Shown: positions 10,587 to 34,494 of the stretch, in pieces
Layout of the letters: each line of letters starts with the position of its first letter
Numbering within the stretch: position 1 is the stretch's first letter
IMG/VR virus record: IMGVR_UViG_3300035180_001778
Location: 62,001-126,000 of that record
Direction: 5' to 3' (one strand)
DNA length: 64,000 nt
The notes under the pieces: model-generated
Databases searched by the model: none
Seen by the model: the letters and a program-made list of their open reading frames with translations, nothing else
Told to the model about the DNA's origin: nothing
Program-made: the position numbers and the translations under genes

Positions 10587-10592
10587 TACACC
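10587..10592 (-). promoter_or_regulatory. GGTGTA element 10 nt upstream of clpX ATG
   Basis: TACACC on + at 10587-10592, ATG at 10576. Confidence 0.6.
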
Positions 10593-12965: not shown

Positions 12966-13355
12966 TTACACCGAGAACTGGTCCTCCCAGCTCTTGATCT
13001 TGGTCCCGCGGTACATGCGCTGGTTCCCCGGCTTGGGTTCCGCGTGCATCGTCAGCGTGTTCATGGGTCCCGAGCGGCCCCCAGGGAGCTTCACCACGTA
13101 GGTCTTCCCCTGGCACTCGATGACGCCCCGACCGCCCGCCAAGAGCGCACCGAAGACCGCTCGGGGCGTCCCGAGGTCGGCCCGGAACCGGATGAACGTA
13201 GAGGTTCCGACGCTCATCGTGTCGAGGCTTTCCAACCTCCGGAAGAGCACCTGTGCTGTCTTGGAGGCCATCATCACCGCTTTTGCCACGTCATGCGACG
13301 TCTCATAGCGCGTGGACTGAACTGCGAAGTATGTCGAGAGGTCGATATCATCCAT
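12966..13355 (-). CDS. Hypothetical protein (129 aa)
   Basis: ORF; start at MDDIDL. Confidence 0.7.
   Translation of the reverse strand: MDDIDLSTYFAVQSTRYETSHDVAKAVMMASKTAQVLFRRLESLDTMSVGTSTFIRFRADLGTPRAVFGALLAGGRGVIECQGKTYVVKLPGGRSGPMNTLTMHAEPKPGNQRMYRGTKIKSWEDQFSV
12967..12972 (-). promoter_or_regulatory. GGTGTA element 10 nt upstream of RNA ligase ATG
   Basis: 15-nt GGACTCTTTACACCG identical to 23994-24008. Confidence 0.6.
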
Positions 13356-16496: not shown

Positions 16497-16517
16497 GGAG
16501 TCCTAATACACCAGGAC

Positions 16518-18804: not shown

Positions 18805-19665
18805 TCAAGTACTCCTGTAGTTCTTTTGGTAGTTGCCCGCGTAAGAGGGCGTCTTCTTGTGACACGAAATGCAGAGCGTTCGACCGTTGGTCAAGTCCCA
18901 GAGGGCGGGACAGTTGAACGCATCTTCGAGGGTCTTGATACGATGCTCGTCGAGGAGTCCCGCAAGAGGTTTAATGTGGTCCGCCTGTAGTTGACCCCCA
19001 ACTTGACCACATCCCTGGCAAGTATAGGCGTCCCTCTTGAAGACATCCTTTCGCCATCGGATAGCCGGTTCGGAGTTCCGAATCAGAGCTGAGAGGCGAG
19101 TTTTCCCGCCCTTCCAGTTGGACCCCTTCTCCCCTAGAAAACGACCTCGGTTGGCTTGAGCTATTTTCTGCTTGATCTCGGAGCTATGCTCACGCCCAAA
19201 GAAGGGATTCTTCTCCCCCACTCGTTGGGAGGCGCTCTCCGAGAGAGCTTGGCGAACCTCCAGTCGTTGCATTGCAGCTTTTTGAGCTGCCACAAAGTCT
19301 GGTGTGTGTCGTATAGAATTCAGCCTTGTGTGTGCGGCTTCCTTCACCTCTTCTGTATGCGTTCTCCCATACATGGGATTTCGGATCCCCGAAGTTGAGG
19401 CACTTCGGCGGGCCTTTACCTCGGGATCCTTATTTGTGACTTGAAGGGTCTCTGAGGTTTTCCGCCGGGTCGCGTCTGACTTCGTCTTCCCGTGCATGGG
19501 GTTTTTGTCCCCAGAGAGCGCCTCGGATTTCGTTCGCCTTGGAATTCCGTAGCGCGCCATGTGGTAGCGGATCGTGCTTGCGGACTCACCACAAAGAGAA
19601 GCGATCTGCCGAAGGGACAGCAGATCGCCAAGGTACTTCTGTCGGAGGAACTCTTCAGTTACCAC
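18805..19665 (-). mobile_element. Free-standing HNH endonuclease with NUMOD3-like repeats and N-terminal HTH
   Basis: Repeated NP(M/F)(H/Y/F)G(K/R)..S/T motifs; RDAYTCQGCG..ADHIKP..NGRTLCISCH. Confidence 0.85.
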
Positions 19666-19689: not shown

Positions 19690-20817
19690 TCAGACTGCAA
19701 CTTTGAAGTTGATGGCCGGGTGCGGATTGTATCCTTCCAAGCGGAAGAGACCCATGATTTCCTCTGTAGTGACCGAGGGATCCATCAGGCGTTCGATATC
19801 GCTGAGATCCTTGATGCTGTCATCGATGATGAGACGAGGAAGAGGACGAGGCTCTCTGGTAAGTTGCTCGCGAGCCCCAGGGGTGTGGTCGTATTCGGCC
19901 ATAGACCCATCGGGCTTGGCACAGTAGATGTGCATGTCGACCACGGAATGCCCAAAAATCCCAGGCTTGATCCCCGTAAACCTGCTGAAAAGCTCGATGA
20001 GAAGAGCGTAGCTGGCAAGGTTGTACGGTGCGCCAAGCATTACATCCAGCGATCTTTGGGTCAAATGAAGACAGAGGCGACGCGGGTCGTCCCCCACAGG
20101 AGGATTCTTGAAGACATCCCCCCCACGCGCTCCGTTGAGAATGACCTGGCAGTCAGGGCACCACGCCTCCCTGTACTTCATCCCTTCCCCGTGCGGAAGA
20201 ACCCGTCGGCCGTCCTTGTAGTTGCCGCACACGGGGTCCTCTCCCCTGTTGTGCCCGTAATGCACGTACCTCGGCGTCGGGTCCTCGTTCTGCACGTTGA
20301 ACACGTAGAGGCAGTGGCAGGGCGGGAGCTTGCTCGTCTGAGCGTTCTGGGGAGCCCAAGCCGAGACGACCATCCGCCGGCTCATGGGGTTCTTGCGCAT
20401 CTCGGCGAGCACCCAGGCGATCTGGTCGTTGAAGGTTGCCCAGACGCCCTGGGGGAGCTGAAAGCCGCCAGGGGTGTTTTCGAACATCGTCTGATTGTAT
20501 GTGTGAACCGGGAAGTTGCGCCAGAAGTTCCCATAGGCGCTCGGGACCTTGCCCGTGACGGGGTCGGCCCATGCGTCCCAGAACTTGCACCCGTGGCGCT
20601 TGAGGATCGCGATGTCCGTCTGGCCCGATAGGAACCACAACATTTCAACAACGATATGAACCCAGTTGACCTTTTTCGTCGTGAGAAGGGGGAAGCCCTC
20701 ACTCAAGTCGACCTCGTAGTAATACCCAAATGTGCTCAACGTATCCACACCAGTACGGTTTTCCTTCCTGGTCCCGTTGCTGAGCACATGGTTCACCGCG
20801 TCGAGGTATTGCTTCAC
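19690..20817 (-). CDS. thyA: Thymidylate synthase with a 70-aa insertion
   Basis: NRTGVDT, FPLLTTKK, EMLWFLSG, LPPCH, QRSLD..LGAPYN, DMHIY; GTG at 20817 with GTGA overlap. Confidence 0.95.
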   Translation of the reverse strand: MKQYLDAVNHVLSNGTRKENRTGVDTLSTFGYYYEVDLSEGFPLLTTKKVNWVHIVVEMLWFLSGQTDIAILKRHGCKFWDAWADPVTGKVPSAYGNFWRNFPVHTYNQTMFENTPGGFQLPQGVWATFNDQIAWVLAEMRKNPMSRRMVVSAWAPQNAQTSKLPPCHCLYVFNVQNEDPTPRYVHYGHNRGEDPVCGNYKDGRRVLPHGEGMKYREAWCPDCQVILNGARGGDVFKNPPVGDDPRRLCLHLTQRSLDVMLGAPYNLASYALLIELFSRFTGIKPGIFGHSVVDMHIYCAKPDGSMAEYDHTPGAREQLTREPRPLPRLIIDDSIKDLSDIERLMDPSVTTEEIMGLFRLEGYNPHPAINFKVAV

Positions 20818-20984
20818 GATTCCATTCTTTCGCGTTCGTGAGGGCACATTCCGTAGAATCCGCGTGCCATGTTGCAGTTGTGGCAGAGAACCCGGAATCC
20901 TCCCGGGAGCCCTTGCCAGTAATTGAAAGAAGATCCACTTCGGACCTTGTCTTTCTTCCTTTGCTGGTTCCGGCGTCTTCTCAT
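20814..20984 (-). pseudogene. C-terminal remnant of a small HNH-type endonuclease (56 aa)
   Basis: MRRRR..GLPGGFRVLCHNCNMARGFYGMCPH; lacks the N-terminal Cys and DH half; below the 60-aa cut-off of the ORF track. Confidence 0.55.
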
Positions 20985-21008
20985 CCGGTGCGTCTACACC
21001 GGATGAGA
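20979..21008. repeat. 12-bp perfect inverted repeat enclosing a GGTGTA promoter motif
   Basis: TCTCATCCGGTG-cgtcta-CACCGGATGAGA. Confidence 0.8.
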
Positions 21009-21009
21009 C

Positions 21010-21234
21010 TCAGTATTCTCCGGGAGGAAGCTGAACGAGTGGTTCAGGCTCGGACAGGTTGTTGACCTGGCGAACCTCAACCCGAGCTTCCCTGAGACAG
21101 GCAAGGAACCCATCCAGGTCTTCCAGTTGAGCGTTGAAGGCGTTCATGCCAGGTTCGAGGAGCAAGAGGTGCTCCGGAAGCGGCACCTCTTCCACAGCCC
21201 AGACAACGAACGAGTAAAAGCCGCCGGTATTCAT
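21010..21234 (-). CDS. Hypothetical protein (74 aa)
   Basis: ATG 21234 with ATGA overlap. Confidence 0.65.
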   Translation of the reverse strand: MNTGGFYSFVVWAVEEVPLPEHLLLLEPGMNAFNAQLEDLDGFLACLREARVEVRQVNNLSEPEPLVQLPPGEY

Positions 21235-22415
21235 CGGACGATCTGAACCTCGACGGGAAGGTCTGTCAACATCATGCCCTTGACGTGACGCCAATCGACC
21301 CAGAGTGTGTACTCGAAGGTAGCCACCACATCCCAGCGATCGTGAACCTCGCGAGCCTCGATTGTGAACGAGTCCGGGTGGATGACGATGACCCCCGCGG
21401 GTCCCTCGATCTCAGTCAGATTCCCCCCCTCAACAGGCATGATAAACGCCCGTTGTTGAAGGGGCCCGAATTGACTTCGGATAACGTCTTTTTGATGGGG
21501 ACTCGCCAACCAAAAAGAGTCCTCCGAATATCCTTCCAGGGGGATCGCAAAGACAGGGTCCAAGTATGATATCTTCTTGGAGTTTCTTCCTTGTGCAACC
21601 ACCGAAAGCGTTCGAGCGATCTCTGCCACCCACTGAGCGGCGATTCGAGCCGTGATGGCCGTCGTCTGATGGAAGTTGAGGTTGATGGTTGTCGGATCGG
21701 CGATGTTGGATCGTCCCGACGCAACCCCGATGCTCCGAACCAGGGGTGTGAGCTTGGATTCTTCCGGATCTGTGTCCCGCAGCTCGAAGCGAGCCAAGAA
21801 CGCTCCCATGTTCCCCCGGACGCGGTTGGGAATCAAGGACGGGAGCTGCTCCCGGATATCTTCGACGATCGTCTTCCTCCCCCGTTTCGTGATGGGAAGG
21901 AAGCGCGGGTCGTCTTCGACGTGGGTCCCCTTGGCCGCAAGACGTCGATAGGTGTCTCGCAGGACGTTCGTCTCCCGAGCTTCATCGAAGACCCATTGGA
22001 CCAGGAAGCCTTCGAGAGCGGGCCGAAGACGACGGAGCGGGGTAGACATCCCCCCGCTCTCACGAGGCACGTCAGGAGGCTGCCAGATGTCCTCCTCCGT
22101 GACCTTGTAGATGGCACGCCCCGTCGTTGACGAGATGATGAGCATCCCGTCGCCGAGCTGGAGGTACTCATCGGCGAGGTAGGCCGCAGCCGCCTGGATC
22201 TCTGCGTTGTTGCCTTCGACATGGTCGAAGAGCACCTCAGCAAGGTCCGAGGCAAACCGAGATGAGTCTTGCTTCTCGTCTCGGGCTCTGCGGAAGAGCT
22301 GTTGAAGGGCAGGGTTGCGTTGGATCTCTTGCCGAGCGGCGAGAAGATCCCCCGAGGCCGGACAAGCGAGTGTCCGGACCTCGGGGATCAGCGGGACCAA
22401 AGAAGAGCTGGGCAT
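21231..22415 (-). CDS. Hypothetical protein (394 aa)
   Basis: Long ORF starting 1 nt after the AAA stop. Confidence 0.8.
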   Translation of the reverse strand: MPSSSLVPLIPEVRTLACPASGDLLAARQEIQRNPALQQLFRRARDEKQDSSRFASDLAEVLFDHVEGNNAEIQAAAAYLADEYLQLGDGMLIISSTTGRAIYKVTEEDIWQPPDVPRESGGMSTPLRRLRPALEGFLVQWVFDEARETNVLRDTYRRLAAKGTHVEDDPRFLPITKRGRKTIVEDIREQLPSLIPNRVRGNMGAFLARFELRDTDPEESKLTPLVRSIGVASGRSNIADPTTINLNFHQTTAITARIAAQWVAEIARTLSVVAQGRNSKKISYLDPVFAIPLEGYSEDSFWLASPHQKDVIRSQFGPLQQRAFIMPVEGGNLTEIEGPAGVIVIHPDSFTIEAREVHDRWDVVATFEYTLWVDWRHVKGMMLTDLPVEVQIVR

Positions 22416-22416
22416 G

Positions 22417-23991
22417 TCACTCGACGAGCTTGAAGCTGCTTCCCTTGCTCGGGGCCGAAGCCAGGCGAGCCTTGATCCCTTCGTTGGCTTCCGTGTCGAA
22501 GCCAACCCACTCGACCAGCTCGCGGATCTCGTCGACCATCGTCTTGAGGATCCGGGGCTTCTTCACCGCGATGTCCAGAAGGATGGTCTCGTCGAGCTTC
22601 TTGCTTCGAGCCTTGAAGCTCTTCCGCATACCCGCGCCGACCGCCTGCTCGATCTCACGACCGACCATGCCCTTGCAAGCATCGGACAGAGCGGCGAGCT
22701 GGTAGTCACTCGGGTTCTGCCCCGCCTTGCGGAGGTGGATCCGGAGGATCTCGATCCGCTCTTCCTCGCTCGGGATGTCGAAGAAGAACCGCTCGTCCAT
22801 ACGGTTGACGAACTCGATGGGGAGCGTCTTCAACGAGTTCGCCGTGAGGGCGAGGCAGATCGGAGACGTGGTCTCCTGGAGCCAGGTCGAGAGGATACCG
22901 ATCGTGCGGCTCGTCGTTCCTGCATCGGAGGCCGCCGAAGATGCCCCGCCGCCGAGGCTCTTCTCGGCCTCATCGATCCACACCACACAGGGAGCGATGG
23001 ACTCGATGTGCCGGATGGCCTTGTAGACGTTGGCTTCGGACTGGCCGACGTTGGCCGACCGGAGCTTGCCCATTTCGAGCTGGACGACCGGCATGCCCCA
23101 CTCACGAGCCATCGCCTTCGAGGCGAGCGACTTGCCACAGCCCCAGACGCCCACGAGGAGGACACCCTTCGGGGGCTTGAGCCCGAAGGCCCGCCCTTCC
23201 TCCGACCAGGAGTCCTTCGTTTCGATCGCCCACTCCTTGAAGCGATGGTTGCCGCCGAGCTGATCGAAGGACACGTTGTCGACGTCGAGAAGCTGGAGAA
23301 GGTCCGTCTTCTTGAGATGGTTCCGGCGATACTTCGTGATGTGCGCCGGGTCGATCCGCTTCGGAGCGGACTCGTCCTTCTTGGTGGCCACGATCGACTT
23401 GGCCACGGCCATATCGATCTGGTAGCTGTTCATCCCAGCGAAGAGCTGCGCACAGTTGGGCGGGGGCTCGACTCCGGGGAGGTGCTTGCAGGCCGCCTCG
23501 ACCGTCGACATGATCTCTTCCGACGTCAGCCCGGTGTCCTGGATGACCTCGACGTAGGGTTCGAGGCAGGCCGGGATCTGCTTGCGGGTCCCGACGAAGA
23601 TCAGGATCTTGAGGGTGCGGATGTCCTGGTGGACCTGGTGAATGATGTTCATGAACCGGCGGTTCACATGAGCATCGTTGAGCCAACGCTCCGGGTCCGT
23701 GAAGACGTAGAAGTTGCGCTCGTCCTTGGGGTCATCCTTGTAGATGTGCTCCAAAGCACTGTGAATGTCCGCCTGCTCCCGATTGACCGCGTGCTGCTTC
23801 GAGGTCCAATCCGTGATCAGGTTCTTGAGCGTCACCAACCCGAGGGTTGCGTTGAACACCCAGCACCGATCGGCGTGCTTCTTGAGGGTGTCCCGCAGCT
23901 TCACGAGGAACCGATCTTCCTCGTCGGTGACGTAGTAAATCACGCGGCTCAGGCTGCGAAGGTGGAAGACGAGTTCTTCGTGGGATGACAT
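22417..23991 (-). CDS. Ycf46-like AAA+ ATPase (degenerate N-terminal plus active C-terminal ATPase domain)
   Basis: YYVTDEEDR N-terminus, PKGVLLVGVWGCGKS, VVWIDEAEK, LTAN, RMDERFFFDIP. Confidence 0.85.
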   Translation of the reverse strand: MSSHEELVFHLRSLSRVIYYVTDEEDRFLVKLRDTLKKHADRCWVFNATLGLVTLKNLITDWTSKQHAVNREQADIHSALEHIYKDDPKDERNFYVFTDPERWLNDAHVNRRFMNIIHQVHQDIRTLKILIFVGTRKQIPACLEPYVEVIQDTGLTSEEIMSTVEAACKHLPGVEPPPNCAQLFAGMNSYQIDMAVAKSIVATKKDESAPKRIDPAHITKYRRNHLKKTDLLQLLDVDNVSFDQLGGNHRFKEWAIETKDSWSEEGRAFGLKPPKGVLLVGVWGCGKSLASKAMAREWGMPVVQLEMGKLRSANVGQSEANVYKAIRHIESIAPCVVWIDEAEKSLGGGASSAASDAGTTSRTIGILSTWLQETTSPICLALTANSLKTLPIEFVNRMDERFFFDIPSEEERIEILRIHLRKAGQNPSDYQLAALSDACKGMVGREIEQAVGAGMRKSFKARSKKLDETILLDIAVKKPRILKTMVDEIRELVEWVGFDTEANEGIKARLASAPSKGSSFKLVE

Positions 23992-24001
23992 AGGGACTCT
24001 T

Positions 24002-24007
24002 TACACC
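24002..24007 (-). promoter_or_regulatory. GGTGTA element 10 nt upstream of AAA ATG
   Basis: TACACC at 24002-24007, ATG at 23991. Confidence 0.6.
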
Positions 24008-24045
24008 GTTGGGGCCTAAACCCCATCTTGATTGAACTTCTACCC

Positions 24046-24096
24046 CTGAAATGCGAGTGCCCTTCCTCTTGTGAAGGAAGGGCACTCGCATTTCAG
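24046..24096. repeat. 22-bp perfect intergenic inverted repeat, 7-nt loop
   Basis: CTGAAATGCGAGTGCCCTTCCT-cttgtga-AGGAAGGGCACTCGCATTTCAG. Confidence 0.9.
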
Positions 24097-24133
24097 TTAC
24101 CGGGGACTCACCCGGCCGCCGAAGGGAACCGGA

Positions 24134-24457
24134 TCAGGCGCTCGCGCACATCAGGGTGATGGTGCCGTCCTTCTCGACGGTGCGGCTCTCGATCGTGATG
24201 CCCTGCTTCAGGCACTCGAAGCGGTAGGACACCTCTCCATAGGCCTGCTTGATGGCACCCAGCGTCGAGGCGCTGTGGCGATCGGTGTCGCCCGTGATCG
24301 TCCCCGTGGTGAGGTCGAGCGAGGCCGTGTTGAGGGGCCCGCTCGTGAAGCGGATGGTGTTGCCGGTCTCCTGGAAGGTGACGCCCTGCTGCTTGCAGGC
24401 CTCCTTCACGTTGGCGGCATTCTTCATCTCGGTTTGGGTCGTGACGCGGTGGGACAT
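24134..24457 (-). CDS. DUF1257 (Ycf35-like) protein
   Basis: MSHRVTTQTEMKN..V..AC..QG..; KQAY..; GITIE..DGTITL; sits upstream of the Ycf46-like AAA. Confidence 0.7.
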   Translation of the reverse strand: MSHRVTTQTEMKNAANVKEACKQQGVTFQETGNTIRFTSGPLNTASLDLTTGTITGDTDRHSASTLGAIKQAYGEVSYRFECLKQGITIESRTVEKDGTITLMCASA

Positions 24458-24496
24458 GTTCTGGGATTCCTCTCGAAAGGGTACTTCTGGTGAGGC

Positions 24497-24679
24497 TTAC
24501 AGCGAAGAGTCGCTGTTGACCTCGGTCTGCGGATCGCACTCGGGGCCGATCTCGTCGTCGCTGAGCTGCTTGCCGATGGCGTTGGTCACCTTGTAGATTT
24601 CGCTGCAAAGGTGGTTCTCGCGGGCGAGAACTTCGGTGACGACCTTGCCGTCGGTCTTGATGGAGGCCTTGAATTTCAT
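24497..24679 (-). CDS. DUF2997-like small protein (60 aa)
   Basis: MKFKASIKTDGKVVTEV..C..T.AIG; adjacent to DUF1257. Confidence 0.65.
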   Translation of the reverse strand: MKFKASIKTDGKVVTEVLARENHLCSEIYKVTNAIGKQLSDDEIGPECDPQTEVNSDSSL

Positions 24680-24732: not shown

Positions 24733-25278
24733 CTATACACCAGAACCGCGGAGCTTGACCGTGCCTCCAGGTGAAATAGTCGGATCCGTTGTGGGAGGAA
24801 GAGAAGAAGCGGCCCACGGATCTCTTGAAGGAGTGACGGGGGCCCCTACCATTTTTCCCGATTGATCCGGGGCATTTGCCAGGGACAACCGGCGCGGGAG
24901 GACCAGCTTGGAGCTGGGAACGGGCGGAACCGAAATGATGGAAGCCGGGGAAACGGGAGCCGTCTCCAGCTTTTCAGCTTCCGCCAGGGGGTCGATCCAC
25001 CCCGAAGAGCGAATCTCAGGGGTGCGCCCGACATACAGGGTCAGGAATCGTTGACCCTGGATCTTCATGTAGCGGGGATCTTGGGGATCCATCTGCGGGG
25101 GGTTGTTGAACAATCGATCCTCCCAGCTCTGGATTCGACGCTCGAATTTAACCCCACTCAAAAGGCTACGAGAACACTCCGAAGTCATGCAACGGGAGCA
25201 GCACTCGGCCGTGAACTGGTCGAGCGACGCCCCGTCCACGTTGCATTCCCCGTACAAATCTCGACGTTCCGAAGCCAT
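24733..25278 (-). CDS. Hypothetical protein, Cys-rich N-terminus (CCSRC..C) and Pro-rich tail
   Basis: 181-aa ORF between polA and DUF2997. Confidence 0.75.
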   Translation of the reverse strand: MASERRDLYGECNVDGASLDQFTAECCSRCMTSECSRSLLSGVKFERRIQSWEDRLFNNPPQMDPQDPRYMKIQGQRFLTLYVGRTPEIRSSGWIDPLAEAEKLETAPVSPASIISVPPVPSSKLVLPRRLSLANAPDQSGKMVGAPVTPSRDPWAASSLPPTTDPTISPGGTVKLRGSGV

Positions 25279-25318: not shown

Positions 25319-28183
25319 TTACGAGCTGGGAAGATACTGTCCGTCGGAAAGATGCATCTCCTTGAGAGCCCCCGCGACCATCTCGGGGTTGATCTTGACT
25401 CCGAGCTTGGGGTCAATGATCGTCTTCCCCGACATCGGGTCAATCAACCGGAGGATCGATCCGTTGTCGGGATCGATGTACTGCGCGCACACCCCACGGA
25501 CTTGCCGAAGCGTGGACGGGGACAGTTCTCGAAGCCGAATCGTGACGACCTTGGGCGGCGGACCATCCTGCTTCAACGTCTGTTGAGACAAGGGAGCCAT
25601 CGGCGAAGAGGGAGGCGTCTCCTTCTCACGACCACCCGAGGACGGGGGAGTTGAAGGGGGCGGTGAGCTGGAGCCCCCCTTGAGCCACGGGGGGTCGATC
25701 TTCAACCGGATGGTGAAGACCTTCTTGCCGCTCTTCTCCTCCGTCTTGACGATGACTTCCTCTTCCAGGATCTCAGCTTCCTTCTCGACCACACGGGTGA
25801 GAGAGTAGACGAATCCGCCGAGGAGCACTTCGAACTCCTTGAGGACATACCCTTCCTTGAAAAGAACGACACCATAGCCCGCGCCCCAGTTGAAGCCGAT
25901 CAAGGGCTCGACAATAAGAGGGACCTGCCAGATAGGCGAGTAGGGAGGACGAGCCATCTTCGTCGGCATCTCCATCTGCTCGACGATGAGGGGGATGGCT
26001 TCCGCCACACGATCGAAGCGAATCTCGAAGACAAGCTCGTCGTGAACCGTGAGGAGCATCCGAACCGAATCGTCACCCCCATTTCGGAGCCAGCCCCGGC
26101 GGTGGAACTCCTTGTGGAGCAGAACCATCGCGATCTTCATGATGTCCGCGCCGCTCCCCTGAATCGGGTAGTTCGTCGCGTGACGCTCACAGGCAGCTCG
26201 GATCATGTTCGCGTCTTGCGACGACAAGATCCGACCGTTGTGCATCTCCCCTTCCATCACGTTGGCATCGGGGATGGCAATCCAACGACCGAAAGCCGTC
26301 CAGACGCCCTTGTCCCTCTTGACCTTCGTGTGTTGCTGCTTGACCCACTTCGCGAAGGTCGGGACCGCCTTATCGAAGGCCGCCTTCCGGCGTTGCCCCT
26401 CGACCTTGTCACAGCCCGTCGCCCGCATGATGGCCGCCGGCCCACCACCGTAGACGAGAGTGAAGTTGGCAATCTTGCCCATCTTCCGCTCGTCCTTGGT
26501 GATGTCCGCCTTGTTGAAGAAGGCCCTGGCGGTGATGCTGTGGAGATCGCCCGACCCTTCCTTGAACTCCTTGATCCAGACGCCTTCGTTCGAGAGGTTC
26601 GTGACGATCCGCAGCTCTTGGCCTGCGTAATCGCACTTGCACATCGCATAGCCCGGCCGGGCCTCGAAGCACGTTCGAATGTCGGACGTCGAAGGAATCC
26701 CGTGGCTGGGGACGCCACTGAAACCATGGTCGAGATGGTCCTTCCGGCTCGGAGCCGAGAAGCGCCCTGTGGCCGCTCCCGTCTGCTTCCAGTCGAACCG
26801 CATCTCCGACAGAGGCATCGCGTGCTTGTCGTAGTTCTCGTAGAGGTTGTGCAGGTAGGTCCCGAGGAGCTTCTCTTCACCCCGGAGCTTGACCATCCAT
26901 TGGAGGATCATGGGGGCATTGGGGCCCATGTCCTTCGTGAGGGTTTCGAGAGTCTCCCCGTCCGTCTTGTACTGCTGAGACTTCTCGTTCTTCTCGGGCT
27001 TGGGGGAGATGTCCAGACCCTTCTCCCCGAAGAGGAACTCTCCGAGCTGCTTGGTGCTCGCAGGGTCGAAGCTGTGGAAGCCCTTGCTCTTGGCGAGAGC
27101 GTCGATGAGAACGAGAAGCTCATCGCGCTTCTTGGTGTGCCTGTCCAGGAGGAGCTTGACCTTGCCCCGGTTCACCATTGCGCGGTTGCGTTCCATGACG
27201 CGAACCACCTGGGATACTTGCTTCTCCAGGCGGTAGGTGAAGCCGTACTTGTCCCGGCTCAGCTTCACGAGGTCGTCTCGTAGGCAGAGGAGGTTCGTGC
27301 AGATAGCGTCGGAACAGGCGTATTTGATCACGCCCGGCTCATCCGGCGAGAGCGAATCGAACTTGATCGGGCGGCCCTTGAGGAACAGCTCCTTCAGCTC
27401 GATCATCTCGTAGGCGTACTCGACCCTCAACCGCTTCCCGTCCGATCCCGTGACCTCTTCCGAGACTCGGAGACGAGACTTCGAGTTCTCCTTGAGACCA
27501 AGCCAGTCGTCGGAGTAGACCGTGAAGGCCGCCAGGCAACCATCCTCGAAGGAGTCGGGGTGCCACCAATCGATCCCCGTGATGGGGTAGAGGAACTCCT
27601 GATCGAACTTGGCGTTCCAGAAGTTGATGACGAGCTGCGGTCCCTCCTCGAACTCCTTGAAGGATAGGAGGTCCTTGGGGGTGCCCTTGGGGGTCGGCTG
27701 CGAGGCGAGACACAGTCGACGGATTTCCGCTTCGACCTCGCTCGGCTTGACGTTCAGATCCGGCATCCCTTCGCCGGTCTTGTGGCGGACAGGGATGTAG
27801 TAGCCCGTCTTGGAGTCGACCGAGATGCAGAACCCCACGATCTTGTGGACCGTCTGAGGCTTGCCCTCCGCATCGTAGAAGATGCGGTTGTCGAGGCCCT
27901 GGGTTTCCAGGTCGAGCGAGCAGTTCTTGGCAGCGATGGCCGCATCGACGATCGTTCGAACCTCTTCGATGGCCTTCACGAGCACGAACTCGTGAAAACG
28001 CATCCACGGCTTCGTCGGGTCGGGGACATCGCGTTCCCTGACCATCCCGGTGTTCGACATGAAGTCGTCGAGCCCACCCTCATCCTCGAAGGACTCGATG
28101 GGGCGATCCTTCTCCTTGCGTCCGAGAGGAGCCGGGGAGTTCAAGAAGTCAATATCGTCGTCATCGAACTCGTCAGCCATCAC
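25319..28183 (-). CDS. polA: Family A DNA polymerase with 3'-5' exonuclease and C-terminal extension
   Basis: ExoI DLET, ExoII NAKFD, ExoIII YACSD; motif A CDYAGQELRI; motif B RKMGKIANFTLVYG; motif C VHDELVFE. Confidence 0.95.
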   Translation of the reverse strand: MMADEFDDDDIDFLNSPAPLGRKEKDRPIESFEDEGGLDDFMSNTGMVRERDVPDPTKPWMRFHEFVLVKAIEEVRTIVDAAIAAKNCSLDLETQGLDNRIFYDAEGKPQTVHKIVGFCISVDSKTGYYIPVRHKTGEGMPDLNVKPSEVEAEIRRLCLASQPTPKGTPKDLLSFKEFEEGPQLVINFWNAKFDQEFLYPITGIDWWHPDSFEDGCLAAFTVYSDDWLGLKENSKSRLRVSEEVTGSDGKRLRVEYAYEMIELKELFLKGRPIKFDSLSPDEPGVIKYACSDAICTNLLCLRDDLVKLSRDKYGFTYRLEKQVSQVVRVMERNRAMVNRGKVKLLLDRHTKKRDELLVLIDALAKSKGFHSFDPASTKQLGEFLFGEKGLDISPKPEKNEKSQQYKTDGETLETLTKDMGPNAPMILQWMVKLRGEEKLLGTYLHNLYENYDKHAMPLSEMRFDWKQTGAATGRFSAPSRKDHLDHGFSGVPSHGIPSTSDIRTCFEARPGYAMCKCDYAGQELRIVTNLSNEGVWIKEFKEGSGDLHSITARAFFNKADITKDERKMGKIANFTLVYGGGPAAIMRATGCDKVEGQRRKAAFDKAVPTFAKWVKQQHTKVKRDKGVWTAFGRWIAIPDANVMEGEMHNGRILSSQDANMIRAACERHATNYPIQGSGADIMKIAMVLLHKEFHRRGWLRNGGDDSVRMLLTVHDELVFEIRFDRVAEAIPLIVEQMEMPTKMARPPYSPIWQVPLIVEPLIGFNWGAGYGVVLFKEGYVLKEFEVLLGGFVYSLTRVVEKEAEILEEEVIVKTEEKSGKKVFTIRLKIDPPWLKGGSSSPPPSTPPSSGGREKETPPSSPMAPLSQQTLKQDGPPPKVVTIRLRELSPSTLRQVRGVCAQYIDPDNGSILRLIDPMSGKTIIDPKLGVKINPEMVAGALKEMHLSDGQYLPSS

Positions 28184-31958: not shown

Positions 31959-31977
31959 TCGCTTCGTCTCTACACCG

Positions 31978-32685: not shown

Positions 32686-32702
32686 GTGCTTGACCTACAC
32701 CG

Positions 32703-34473: not shown

Positions 34474-34494
34474 CTACACCGAGCTTTGGTGTAG
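34474..34494. promoter_or_regulatory. Divergent pair of GGTGTA elements
   Basis: CTACACC-gagcttt-GGTGTAG between SNF2 (-) and the 34546 gene (+). Confidence 0.6.

What the first reader, a model, noticed from the sequence alone, without database searches (positions are those of the whole stretch)
22417..24679. Phage-encoded DUF2997-DUF1257-Ycf46-like AAA+ trio next to the DNA polymerase
Seen: a 60-aa, a 107-aa and a 524-aa gene in that order, with motifs matching the DUF2997, DUF1257/Ycf35 and Ycf46-type AAA families. Knowledge: these three families co-occur in cyanobacteria, plastids and other bacteria, and their function is poorly understood. Here they sit in a phage replication region, with a 22-bp hairpin and a dedicated GGTGTA promoter decoupling the ATPase from the two small genes. 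Inference: a remodelling machine (small heterodimer as adaptor or substrate plus unfoldase) used during infection, possibly together with the flanking 394-aa and 181-aa proteins.
Basis: partly seen in the sequence, partly recalled or inferred. Interest (0 to 1): 0.7.

Follow-up and report, generated by a model that had tools for sequence, protein, structure and literature searches.

The report
Jumbo-phage Ycf46-like ATPase with two partners
A giant phage from sediment and microbial-mat metagenomes carries, next to its DNA polymerase, its own copy of a three-gene set (an ATP-driven protein-remodelling enzyme and two small partner proteins) that also occurs in cyanobacteria, plastids and many other bacteria and whose job is still unknown.

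Summary
On the minus strand lie a 60-aa gene (24497-24679), a 107-aa gene (24134-24457) and a 524-aa AAA+ gene (22417-23991). They sit between a 181-aa gene with PolA upstream and a 394-aa gene downstream, in a 350-kb IMG/VR phage record. The ATPase is Ycf46-like: its five best Swiss-Prot fold matches are plastid Ycf46 over the full length. The 107-aa protein is a divergent DUF1257, below Pfam's cut-off but clear by profile and fold. The 60-aa protein gets no Pfam hit; its family matches an independent DUF2997 alignment (hhalign 90.7%, E 1e-6). The order PolA-181-60-107-AAA-394 recurs in about 49 of 54 related IMG/VR loci. A strong hairpin followed by GGTGTA before the ATPase recurs in 34 of 40 loci. 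The trio alone also occurs in Rhizobium, Pseudomonas, Aeromonas and Rhodobacter siphophages. DUF1257 lies beside 42 of 80 cellular Ycf46-like genes, and both small genes beside 18. The heterodimer prediction gave weak support only. Function stays inferred: most likely a hexameric remodeller with the small pair as cofactor or client. GGTGTA is a genome-wide gene-start signal (80 sites), not special to this gene. This is a new member of a known but uncharacterised kind.

The parts
25319..28183 (-). Family A DNA polymerase (954 aa), the upstream neighbour of the block
   Evidence: Pfam DNA_pol_A E 9e-65 and phrog_17 E 3e-93. It precedes the block in nearly all related loci.
24733..25278 (-). 181-aa protein. 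It has an N-terminal 4-Cys motif, a Pro-rich linker and a conserved C-terminal GSGV. It is specific to this phage clade.
   Evidence: No Pfam, PHROG, NCBIfam or PADLOC hit. Relatives are 36-42% identical. It is present in 52 of 54 IMG/VR loci. hhalign finds no similarity to the neighbours of the siphophage trio.
24736..24741 (-). GGTGTA motif P1. It overlaps the last two codons of the 181-aa gene (GGT GTA TAG) and lies 56 nt before the 60-aa ATG. It is a putative promoter of the small-gene pair.
   Evidence: GGTGTA lies upstream of the 60-aa gene in 34 of 41 unique related loci, and in 17 of them it overlaps the end of the 181-aa gene.
24497..24679 (-). 60-aa protein, a divergent DUF2997-like protein with an SD-like GGAGAG 9-14 nt upstream
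   Evidence: No Pfam hit for this protein itself. Its family has 70 representatives. Of 61 members scanned, 20 touch PF11211, best E 8e-5. hhalign against an independent DUF2997 alignment gives 90.7% and E 1.2e-6, while cross-controls give 0.7-2%.
24134..24457 (-). 107-aa protein, DUF1257 / Ycf35-like
   Evidence: PF06868 scores 18.9 bits against a cut-off of 22.2. 13 of 25 homologues hit it. An independent DUF1257 HMM gives 38.5 bits, E 1.9e-12, and hhalign gives 98.3%. The AF2 model has pLDDT 86, and its best AFDB clusters are DUF1257/Ycf35 with TM up to 0.84. The N-terminal MSH is shared with the family.
24046..24096 (-). Perfect 22-bp stem with a 7-nt loop between the 107-aa gene and the ATPase gene. 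It is a putative terminator or insulator with no T-run in this genome.
   Evidence: dG -46.4, z -9.9. Most related loci have a hairpin in the same position with a different sequence, often followed by a T-run. L047 (94% identical ATPase) shows compensatory changes in the stem.
24002..24007 (-). GGTGTA motif P2, 10 nt before the ATPase ATG. It is a putative promoter or start-linked signal.
   Evidence: It is present in the 107-aa to ATPase gap in 34 of 40 unique loci. Genome-wide there are 210 copies, 80 followed by ATG at 8-12 nt and 47 at exactly 10 nt. 74 of the 80 precede an ORF of at least 50 aa.
22417..23991 (-). 524-aa Ycf46-like AAA+ ATPase. Residues 1-230 form a degenerate AAA-like domain with no P-loop. 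Residues about 230-460 form an active classical AAA domain, followed by a C-terminal helical tail.
   Evidence: PF00004 E 9e-21 and phrog_8638 E 1e-85 over the full length. The AF2 model has pLDDT 83. The top five Swiss-Prot fold matches are Ycf46, TM 0.71-0.80 over residues 1-512. The PDB profile search matches Cdc48/p97 D2 at E 1e-40. Walker A GKS, Walker B DEAE, N385, R397 and R401 are invariant.
21231..22415 (-). 394-aa clade-specific protein. Its ATG lies 1 nt after the ATPase stop codon, so it is probably co-transcribed.
   Evidence: Relatives are 33-38% identical. It follows the ATPase gene in 51 of 54 loci. No family hit.

Best explanation
This is the phage copy of a conserved three-gene module: a Ycf46-type AAA+ ATPase, a DUF1257 (Ycf35-like) protein and a DUF2997 protein. 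It is fixed as a core gene block beside the replication genes of a large clade of jumbo phages. Shown: the homology of all three genes; the two-tier build of the ATPase (a pseudo-ATPase N-domain and a catalytically intact classical AAA domain); conserved linkage of the three genes in jumbo phages and in four of the five siphophage genomes checked, and beside 18 of 80 cellular Ycf46-like genes (DUF1257 alone beside 42); and a conserved arrangement of motif, small genes, hairpin, motif, ATPase. Inferred: the ATPase forms a hexamer that uses ATP to remodel or extract a protein target. The two small proteins form a heterodimer that works with it as a dedicated cofactor or adaptor, as Ufd1-Npl4 does for Cdc48. 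The small-gene pair and the ATPase (with the 394-aa gene) are separate transcription units that carry the same YGGTGTA signal. They would therefore be made at the same time but in different amounts, with the hairpin limiting read-through. The target is unknown. My estimate is about 0.9 for the identity of the module and about 0.4 for the cofactor-plus-remodeller mechanism.
For: ATPase identity. Catalytic motifs invariant in 37 homologues. The ATPase is the most conserved gene of the block (median 54.6% identity, PolA 49.2%). Inteins sit just after Walker B in two relatives, as is usual for essential conserved proteins. DUF1257. DUF2997. Synteny in jumbo phages. Trio in siphophages with a different gene order (ATPase, about 200 aa, DUF1257, DUF2997) and Pfam hits over the cut-off in 4 of 5 (DUF2997) and 3 of 5 (DUF1257) genomes. 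Cellular loci: DUF1257 next to 42 of 80 Ycf46-like genes and both small genes next to 18 of 80. Pair prediction for the 107-aa and 60-aa proteins: weak support, score 0.44 against a best control of 0.02. That mark was reached by 58 of 80 solved complexes and 2 of 110 mismatched pairs, but at 0.60 or under by only 7 of the 80 solved complexes and by both mismatches. The runs agree in at least 85% of contacts and the partner's pLDDT is at least 52. An AFDB cluster labelled DUF2997 (228 aa) aligns to the DUF1257 model over its residues 58-164, which suggests a natural fusion. Regulatory layout.
Against: No experiment or transcript data exist, and no RNA run was listed. The pair prediction is weak, and no ATPase-partner contact was tested. 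Pore loop 1 in the jumbo clade is S-G/N/A-V-G with no aromatic residue, whereas the siphophage homologues have F, L, W or Y. Classical substrate threading is therefore less certain. One sub-lineage keeps 181-AAA-394 but has no detectable 60-aa or 107-aa gene anywhere in a 301-kb genome with terminal repeats, so the ATPase can apparently do without them. The window's hairpin lacks a T-run. The window's own 60-aa protein scores only E 0.12 against the independent DUF2997 HMM.
Confidence: 0.6

Rival explanations
1. The two small proteins are clients, not adaptors. The ATPase assembles, disassembles or activates a DUF1257-DUF2997 complex that is itself the effector, for example a metal- or nucleic-acid-binding particle.
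For: The N-terminal MSH and an Asp/His-rich GDTD..H block are invariant in the 107-aa family, and a Cys is conserved in the 60-aa family. This suggests an activity of their own. Separate dosage control by the hairpin suits an abundant client. In cyanobacteria DUF2997 and ycf35 also cluster with a ferredoxin gene, away from ycf46 (PMC4284462).
Against: There is no structural or family clue to an enzymatic or binding activity. No solved relative of the DUF1257 fold exists (Foldseek best E 0.15, VIA-align Z 6.1). A lineage without the small genes keeps the ATPase.
Confidence: 0.25
2. The ATPase is a replication factor in the strict sense (a clamp loader, helicase loader or origin factor), and its place beside PolA reflects that role. 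The small genes would be incidental.
For: It lies between the PolA-primase-DnaB genes and thymidylate synthase. There are weak hits to clamp-loader PHROGs (E 2e-6) and to RFC large-subunit models (E 2e-4).
Against: The best matches by far are classical-clade AAA proteins: Cdc48 D2 at E 1e-40 and Ycf46 folds at E 1e-37. In siphophages the trio sits near lysis and tail-fibre-assembly genes, not near a polymerase. Cellular homologues keep the small partners without replication genes nearby.
Confidence: 0.07
3. GGTGTA is not a promoter but a translation or mRNA-processing signal, and the hairpin is a stabiliser or RNase site rather than a terminator. The five genes would then be one operon with PolA.
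For: The distance to the ATG is sharply fixed: 47 of 80 sites at exactly 10 nt. There is no -35-like element. No phage RNA polymerase or sigma factor was found in the 350-kb record. The window's hairpin has no T-run (one search lists no terminator there).
Against: In relatives the same motif lies 7 to 75 nt from the ATPase ATG and 9 to 56 nt from the 60-aa ATG. The longer leaders checked carry their own SD-like sequence. That fits a promoter better than a ribosome-binding signal. In the relatives inspected by eye the hairpins are often followed by T-runs, as in intrinsic terminators.
Confidence: 0.25
4. The module is a host-takeover or counter-defence device. The ATPase extracts or unfolds a host protein, such as a defence complex or nucleoid protein, with the small pair as the targeting subunit.
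For: This is a special case of the best explanation. The module is carried by unrelated phage lineages infecting different hosts. The AAA domain resembles the defence ATPase IetA/IteA (E 3e-14 and 9e-13).
Against: The IetA similarity is limited to the generic AAA domain (residues 267-478). Counter-defence genes are usually variable, whereas this ATPase is more conserved than PolA. Free-living bacteria keep the same module.
Confidence: 0.15

Closest known systems
Ycf46 (plastid and cyanobacterial AAA protein) with its Ycf35/DUF1257 and DUF2997 neighbours
   Same: The architecture matches over the full length: TM 0.71-0.80 and 26-27% identity to five Swiss-Prot Ycf46 models. DUF1257 lies directly downstream of cellular Ycf46-like genes in 42 of 80 loci, and DUF1257 plus DUF2997 in 18 of 80. 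The N-terminal MSH of DUF1257 is shared.
   Different: This copy is phage-borne. Its gene order is reversed (DUF2997, DUF1257, ATPase). The small proteins are too divergent for Pfam thresholds. Pore loop 1 has no aromatic residue. The ATPase has its own start-linked motif after a hairpin. The cellular function is itself unknown: the literature reports only a KaiC interaction, effects on carbon concentration and stress induction (PMC13683863).
The same trio in cultivated siphophages: Rhizobium RHph_I4 and vB_RleS_L338C, Pseudomonas PA_L9 (Samunavirus), Aeromonas HJ05, Rhodobacter RcKickapoo
   Same: The ATPase is homologous (24-27% over the full-length alignment; 29-32% in tblastn segments). 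DUF1257 and DUF2997 genes lie within 2 kb, and RHph_I4 is annotated that way in GenBank.
   Different: The order is ATPase, a gene of about 200 aa, DUF1257, DUF2997, and there is no polymerase nearby. Their flanking genes are unrelated to the 181-aa and 394-aa proteins. Their pore loop has the usual aromatic or hydrophobic residue.
Cdc48/p97 with Ufd1-Npl4 (a type II AAA+ unfoldase with a heterodimeric cofactor)
   Same: The C-terminal domain matches Cdc48/p97 D2 (E 1e-40). The whole model aligns to D1 plus D2 (E about 1e-20). The idea of a small heterodimer acting as adaptor comes by analogy from my own knowledge of that system.
   Different: The N-tier here has no P-loop (VTDEEDRF in its place) and there is no N-domain of the Cdc48 type. 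The small proteins are unrelated to Ufd1 and Npl4. The analogy is functional only and was not tested.
IetA/IteA anti-phage AAA ATPase (IetAS system)
   Same: The AAA domains are similar: PADLOC IetA E 3e-14 and NCBIfam IteA E 9e-13.
   Different: The match covers only residues 267-492, with scores far below the family cut-off (48 against 510 bits). There is no IetS protease partner. This ATPase is not a member.

Membership tests
Ycf46-type AAA+ ATPase | Classical AAA domain (PF00004) above the curated threshold | tested here: met
   75.2 bits against a cut-off of 21.2, residues 277-405.
Ycf46-type AAA+ ATPase | Full-length architecture shared with reviewed Ycf46 proteins: an N-terminal alpha/beta domain followed by one active AAA domain, about 490-520 aa in all | tested here: met
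   The top five AFDB Swiss-Prot matches are all Ycf46. They align residues 1-512 to 1-490 with TM 0.71-0.80 and E 1e-33 to 5e-37. The next matches (Cdc48, PEX6) have E about 1e-20.
Ycf46-type AAA+ ATPase | Intact Walker A, Walker B, sensor 1 and arginine fingers | tested here: met
   G284, G286, K287, S288, D340, E341, N385, R397 and R401 are invariant in 37 homologues. G284, G286, K287, D340, E341, N385 and R397 are also invariant when five siphophage homologues are added.
Ycf46-type AAA+ ATPase | Orthology with the cellular clade | tested here: inconclusive
   In a rough FastTree the jumbo-phage proteins form their own clade (support 0.99), separate from the cyanobacterial and verrucomicrobial group. 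Some cellular rows may be wrongly chosen ORFs.
DUF1257 (PF06868, Ycf35) | Pfam gathering score | tested here: not met
   18.9 bits against 22.2, and 18.3 bits in the six-frame search.
DUF1257 (PF06868, Ycf35) | Profile-level homology and shared fold | tested here: met
   13 of 25 close homologues hit PF06868, best E 3e-6. An independent HMM gives 38.5 bits, E 1.9e-12, and hhalign gives 98.3%, E 1e-14. The best AFDB fold clusters are named DUF1257 or ycf35, with TM up to 0.84.
DUF2997 (PF11211) | Pfam gathering score | tested here: not met
   No hit even at E 10 for the window's protein and none in the six-frame search of the genome.
DUF2997 (PF11211) | Profile-level homology to verified members | tested here: met
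   hhalign of the 61-member family against 24 independent DUF2997 sequences gives 90.7%, E 1.2e-6 over 50 columns, with the DG and Cys aligned. Cross-controls give 0.7-2%. 20 of 61 members touch PF11211. The window's own protein scores only E 0.12.
DUF2997 (PF11211) | Gene lies next to a DUF1257 gene | tested here: met
   The two genes are adjacent in the window, in about 49 of 54 related loci, in four of five siphophage genomes and in 18 cellular loci.
Threading AAA+ unfoldase | Aromatic-hydrophobic-Gly pore loop 1 | tested here: not met
   The window has A-N-V-G and the jumbo-clade consensus is S-G-V-G. The siphophage homologues have F-I-G, L-V-G, W-V-G or Y-V-G.
Intrinsic (rho-independent) terminator | GC-rich hairpin followed by a T-run | tested here: inconclusive
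   The hairpin is strong, but the window has no T-run and the consensus scan lists no terminator there. Hairpins at the same position in relatives, read by eye, often have T-runs.
Promoter | Transcripts start at the motif | not testable with these tools
   No RNA run was listed for this sequence. The only evidence is conservation and positional enrichment.

The most novel reading that the evidence does not exclude
The Ycf46-like ATPase with DUF1257 and DUF2997 is an essential, replication-linked protein-remodelling machine of a widespread clade of 300-500-kb phages, for example one that loads, recycles or clears replisome or nucleoid proteins. Because the module is homologous to plastid and cyanobacterial Ycf46/Ycf35, working out its target in a phage would reveal the long-unknown biochemical role of those conserved genes.
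Probability: 0.15. Interest if true: 0.8.

Novelty: new member of a known kind. Interest (0 to 1): 0.55.

Why it matters
Ycf46 and Ycf35 are among the conserved plastid and cyanobacterial open reading frames that still have no biochemical function. In the paper library searched, only three papers mention DUF2997, and the two listed do not discuss phages. This work shows three things. The three genes form one linked module in bacteria, archaea and at least five phage lineages. In one clade of giant phages the ATPase is more conserved than the DNA polymerase. Cultivable phages of Pseudomonas, Rhizobium, Aeromonas and Rhodobacter carry the same module. A small, knock-out-friendly system therefore exists in which to find the target of this ATPase family. 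The side finding of a YGGTGTA-N10-ATG signal at about 80 genes gives a handle on gene expression in an uncultivated jumbo-phage clade.

Tried and rejected
1. Direct Pfam and NCBIfam calls for the 60-aa protein gave nothing. hhalign of thin profiles against single DUF2997 proteins was not significant. Only a deeper, independent alignment gave a signal.
2. The 181-aa and 394-aa proteins had no hit in Pfam, PHROGs, NCBIfam, PADLOC or the ESM Atlas. They showed no profile similarity to the genes flanking the siphophage trio. I therefore reject them as universal parts of the module.
3. The DUF1257 fold has no convincing solved relative: Foldseek best E 0.15 and VIA-align best Z 6.1 to KA1- and TBP-like alpha+beta domains, below the tool's own caution level.
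4. Apparent ATPase-DUF1257 fusions in two cellular loci turned out to be artefacts of stop-to-stop ORFs in another frame. Rejected.
5. Conserved extra neighbours of the cellular trio (TPR protein, ECF sigma factor, T2SSE ATPase) are lineage-specific only.
6. RNA evidence: no RNA run was listed, only DNA runs from sediment and microbial-mat metagenomes.
7. A phage RNA polymerase or sigma factor that could read GGTGTA was not found with PF00940, PF04542 or PF00562. The PF00940 search also rang in no control genome, so that result is uninformative.
8. The hairpin inside the start of the 394-aa gene is not general in relatives: median z -0.5, with 7 of 45 below -2.
9. The pair prediction for the 107-aa and 60-aa proteins gave weak support only (score 0.44, best control 0.02).
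10. The PADLOC PbeC hit of the 60-aa protein (18.9 bits, E 1e-4) was not pursued. It covers 42 residues of a 660-position model.
Full report
WHAT IS THERE. All genes in this part of the window lie on the minus strand. In the direction of transcription they run as follows.
- A family A DNA polymerase, 25319-28183 (954 aa; DNA_pol_A E 9e-65).
- A 181-aa gene, 24733-25278.
- A 60-aa gene, 24497-24679.
- A 107-aa gene, 24134-24457.
- A 142-nt gap.
- A 524-aa gene, 22417-23991.
- A 394-aa gene, 21231-22415, whose ATG lies 1 nt after the previous stop codon.
Further upstream are a primase-like gene, DnaB and an SNF2 helicase. Downstream are thymidylate synthase and an HNH/NUMOD3 endonuclease. The window is part of a 350,469-bp IMG/VR virus record that CheckV rates 73% complete. 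Its DNA is held in sediment and microbial-mat metagenomes.

THE ATPASE. The 524-aa protein has a clear AAA domain (PF00004, 75 bits). It also matches phrog_8638 over its full length (E 1e-85). A profile of 37 homologues matches the D2 domain of Cdc48/p97 in the PDB at E 1e-40. An AlphaFold2 model has mean pLDDT 83. Its five best matches among reviewed UniProt models are all plastid Ycf46, aligned over residues 1-512 with TM 0.71-0.80. After these come Cdc48, PEX6 and AFG2, aligned over their D1 plus D2 domains. So 'Ycf46-like' is correct. The N-terminal 230 residues form an AAA-like alpha/beta tier without a P-loop: the invariant stretch VT(D/E)EEDRF sits where the P-loop would be. Walker A, Walker B, sensor 1 and two arginines are invariant. 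One departure stands out. Pore loop 1 reads A-N-V-G here and S-G-V-G in the clade consensus, with no aromatic residue. Homologues in siphophages have F, L, W or Y at that place.

THE SMALL PROTEINS. The 107-aa protein scores 18.9 bits on DUF1257, below the 22.2 cut-off. Other evidence supports the assignment.
- 13 of 25 close homologues hit the family.
- I built an HMM only from Pfam-verified siphophage proteins and their cellular counterparts. It gives the window's protein 38.5 bits (E 1.9e-12), and hhalign gives 98.3%.
- The model (pLDDT 86) matches AFDB clusters named DUF1257 or ycf35 best, with TM up to 0.84.
- The N-terminal Met-Ser-His is shared with the family.
The 60-aa protein has no Pfam hit at all. 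A profile search of 1.84 billion representatives found 70 relatives. Of the 61 scanned, 20 touch DUF2997, and no other family recurs. hhalign of this family against an independent alignment of 24 DUF2997 proteins gives 90.7% and E 1.2e-6 over 50 columns, with the conserved Asp-Gly and Cys aligned. The two cross-controls give 0.7% and 2%. I take it as a divergent DUF2997. The call rests on the family, not on the single sequence.

SYNTENY. Four relatives fetched through the 107-aa protein show DnaB, primase, PolA, a gene of about 190 aa, one of about 60 aa, one of about 108 aa, a gap, the ATPase, and where the contig continues a gene of about 400 aa, NT5C and ThyA. A scan of IMG/VR gave 54 loci on contigs of up to 529 kb. 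With my own HMMs the order PolA-181-60-107-AAA-394 is seen in about 49 of them. Two further loci have an unrecognised 61-62-aa ORF in the 60-aa slot. Measured against the window, the ATPase is the best conserved gene of the block. Median identities are ATPase 54.6%, 60-aa 50.9%, PolA 49.2%, 107-aa 41.3%, 181-aa 35.4% and 394-aa 32.5%. Two relatives carry inteins directly after Walker B. One sub-lineage (L062, L067) has 181-AAA-394 but no detectable small genes anywhere in a 301-kb genome with terminal repeats.

REGULATORY ANATOMY. The 22-bp perfect hairpin (24046-24096) is the longest inverted repeat in the window. It folds at -46.4 kcal/mol, z -9.9. It has no T-run, and the consensus scan does not list it as a terminator. 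In related loci the same gap usually holds a strong GC-rich hairpin of unrelated sequence. In the loci I read by eye this hairpin is often followed by a T-run. A near relative (94% identical ATPase) shows compensatory changes in the stem.
GGTGTA follows the hairpin in 34 of 40 unique loci. It also lies upstream of the 60-aa gene in 34 of 41 loci. In 17 of these it overlaps the last codons of the 181-aa gene, whose conserved C-terminal Gly-Val is written GGT GTA.
In the whole genome there are 210 copies of GGTGTA. 80 are followed by ATG at 8-12 nt (47 at exactly 10 nt), and 74 of those 80 open an ORF of at least 50 aa. A pyrimidine precedes the motif, and there is no -35-like or SD-like element.
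In relatives the distance from the motif to the ATG varies from 7 to 75 nt, and the longer leaders I checked carry their own SD-like sequence. This fits a compact promoter better than a translation signal. No transcript data could be found, and no phage RNA polymerase or sigma factor was detected.
The motif is therefore not a promoter dedicated to the ATPase. It is the standard start signal of this phage, and both units have one. The hairpin most plausibly sets the ratio between the small proteins and the ATPase rather than their timing.

BEYOND THIS CLADE. tblastn finds ATPase homologues in 101 phage records. In Rhizobium phages RHph_I4 and L338C, Pseudomonas phage PA_L9, Aeromonas phage HJ05 and Rhodobacter phage RcKickapoo, the ATPase is followed within 2 kb by DUF1257 and DUF2997 genes. 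The Pfam models pass their cut-offs in 4 of 5 genomes (DUF2997) and 3 of 5 (DUF1257), and RHph_I4 is already annotated that way. Mycobacteriophage Firecracker has the ATPase but no detectable partners. The gene order differs from the jumbo clade, and the flanking genes are unrelated to the 181-aa and 394-aa proteins.
Among 80 cellular loci encoding Ycf46-like proteins, DUF1257 lies just downstream in 42 and DUF1257 plus DUF2997 in 18. These loci come from cyanobacteria, Verrucomicrobiota, Planctomycetota, Myxococcota, Chloroflexota and some archaea, at 28-36% identity. The three genes are thus a linked module across cells and phages. The polymerase neighbourhood and the two flanking genes are features of the jumbo clade only.

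INTERACTION. The verdict was weak support, with score 0.44 against a best control of 0.02. That mark was reached by 58 of 80 solved complexes and 2 of 110 mismatched pairs, but at 0.60 or under by only 7 of the 80 solved complexes and by both mismatches. The runs agree in at least 85% of contacts, and the partner's pLDDT is at least 52. An AFDB cluster labelled DUF2997 (228 aa) aligns to the DUF1257 model over its residues 58-164, which hints at a natural fusion. I did not verify this. Apparent ATPase-DUF1257 fusions were artefacts.

MECHANISM. What is shown is homology, an intact catalytic site, strong purifying selection, conserved linkage and a conserved motif-genes-hairpin-motif layout. 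What is inferred is that the ATPase is a hexameric remodeller with the small heterodimer as its cofactor or adaptor, and that its target is a phage or host protein. I put this at about 0.4. The main alternative, at about 0.25, is that the small pair is the client or effector. A strict replication-factor role is unlikely (0.07), because the domain belongs to the classical clade and the trio travels without replication genes elsewhere. The missing aromatic pore residue and the lineage without small genes are real cautions.

COMPARISON AND NOVELTY. The closest known relatives are Ycf46 with Ycf35/DUF1257 and DUF2997, whose function is unknown. The literature links Ycf46 to KaiC, carbon concentration and severe-stress arrest in cyanobacteria (PMC13683863). 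It also notes a DUF2997-ycf35-fed7 cluster (PMC4284462). In the library searched, three papers mention DUF2997, and the two that were listed do not treat the phage module. This is a new, divergent member of a known but uncharacterised kind, not a new kind of system.

Noticed in passing
Whole genome G000 (350 kb). In the window, for example 10587-10592, 12967-12972, 16507-16512, 20995-21000, 31971-31976, 32696-32701 and 34475-34480 (minus strand).: YGGTGTA followed by ATG at a nearly fixed distance. There are 210 copies in the genome, 80 with ATG at 8-12 nt (47 at exactly 10 nt), and 74 of these open an ORF of at least 50 aa. There is no -35-like element and no SD-like element in the spacer. 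It looks like a compact phage promoter giving very short leaders. No phage RNA polymerase or sigma factor was found that could read it.
   Followed up: partly
L059:5007-7925 and L060:4992-7049 (relatives). PolA of L009:1179-5219.: The ATPase gene of some relatives is interrupted by an intein just after Walker B: one with a LAGLIDADG domain and one mini-intein. In L009 the called PolA gene (1,346 aa) carries a faint LAGLIDADG hit between two DNA_pol_A hits. In many other loci the PolA match is split into two or more pieces, whose cause I did not check.
   Followed up: partly
L062 and L067 (IMG/VR contigs of 301,550 bp and 159,228 bp): A sub-lineage keeps 181-aa, ATPase and 394-aa genes directly adjacent. 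It has no detectable DUF1257-like or DUF2997-like gene anywhere in a 301-kb genome with terminal repeats.
   Followed up: partly
window 24733-25278 (minus strand): The 181-aa protein has a conserved Cys-x(18-24)-Cys-x2-Cys-x4-Cys motif, a Pro-rich low-complexity middle and a conserved C-terminus ending GSGV. Its last codons, GGT GTA TAG, coincide with the promoter-like motif of the next gene in several relatives. It has no known family.
   Followed up: partly
window 22352-22388 (minus strand): An imperfect 15-bp hairpin lies inside codons 10-21 of the 394-aa gene, just after the ATPase stop (dG -35 kcal/mol, z -3.6). A similar hairpin is seen in some relatives (L006, L016) but not generally: 7 of 45 have z below -2.
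   Followed up: partly
G000:C1:5379-5819 (outside the window): A second, weak match to residues 33-181 of the ATPase (its pseudo-ATPase N-tier) lies in a 271-aa open frame elsewhere in the genome (E 2e-6, 25% identity). It may be a stand-alone paralogue of the N-domain.
   Followed up: no
window 18805-19665 (minus strand): An HNH/NUMOD3 homing-endonuclease-like gene lies directly downstream of thymidylate synthase (19690-20847). The thymidylate synthase Pfam match is itself in two stretches.
   Followed up: no
window 24497-24679 (minus strand): The 60-aa protein gives a weak PADLOC hit to PbeC (18.9 bits, E 1e-4) over positions 399-440 of a 660-position model. It is probably spurious.
   Followed up: no
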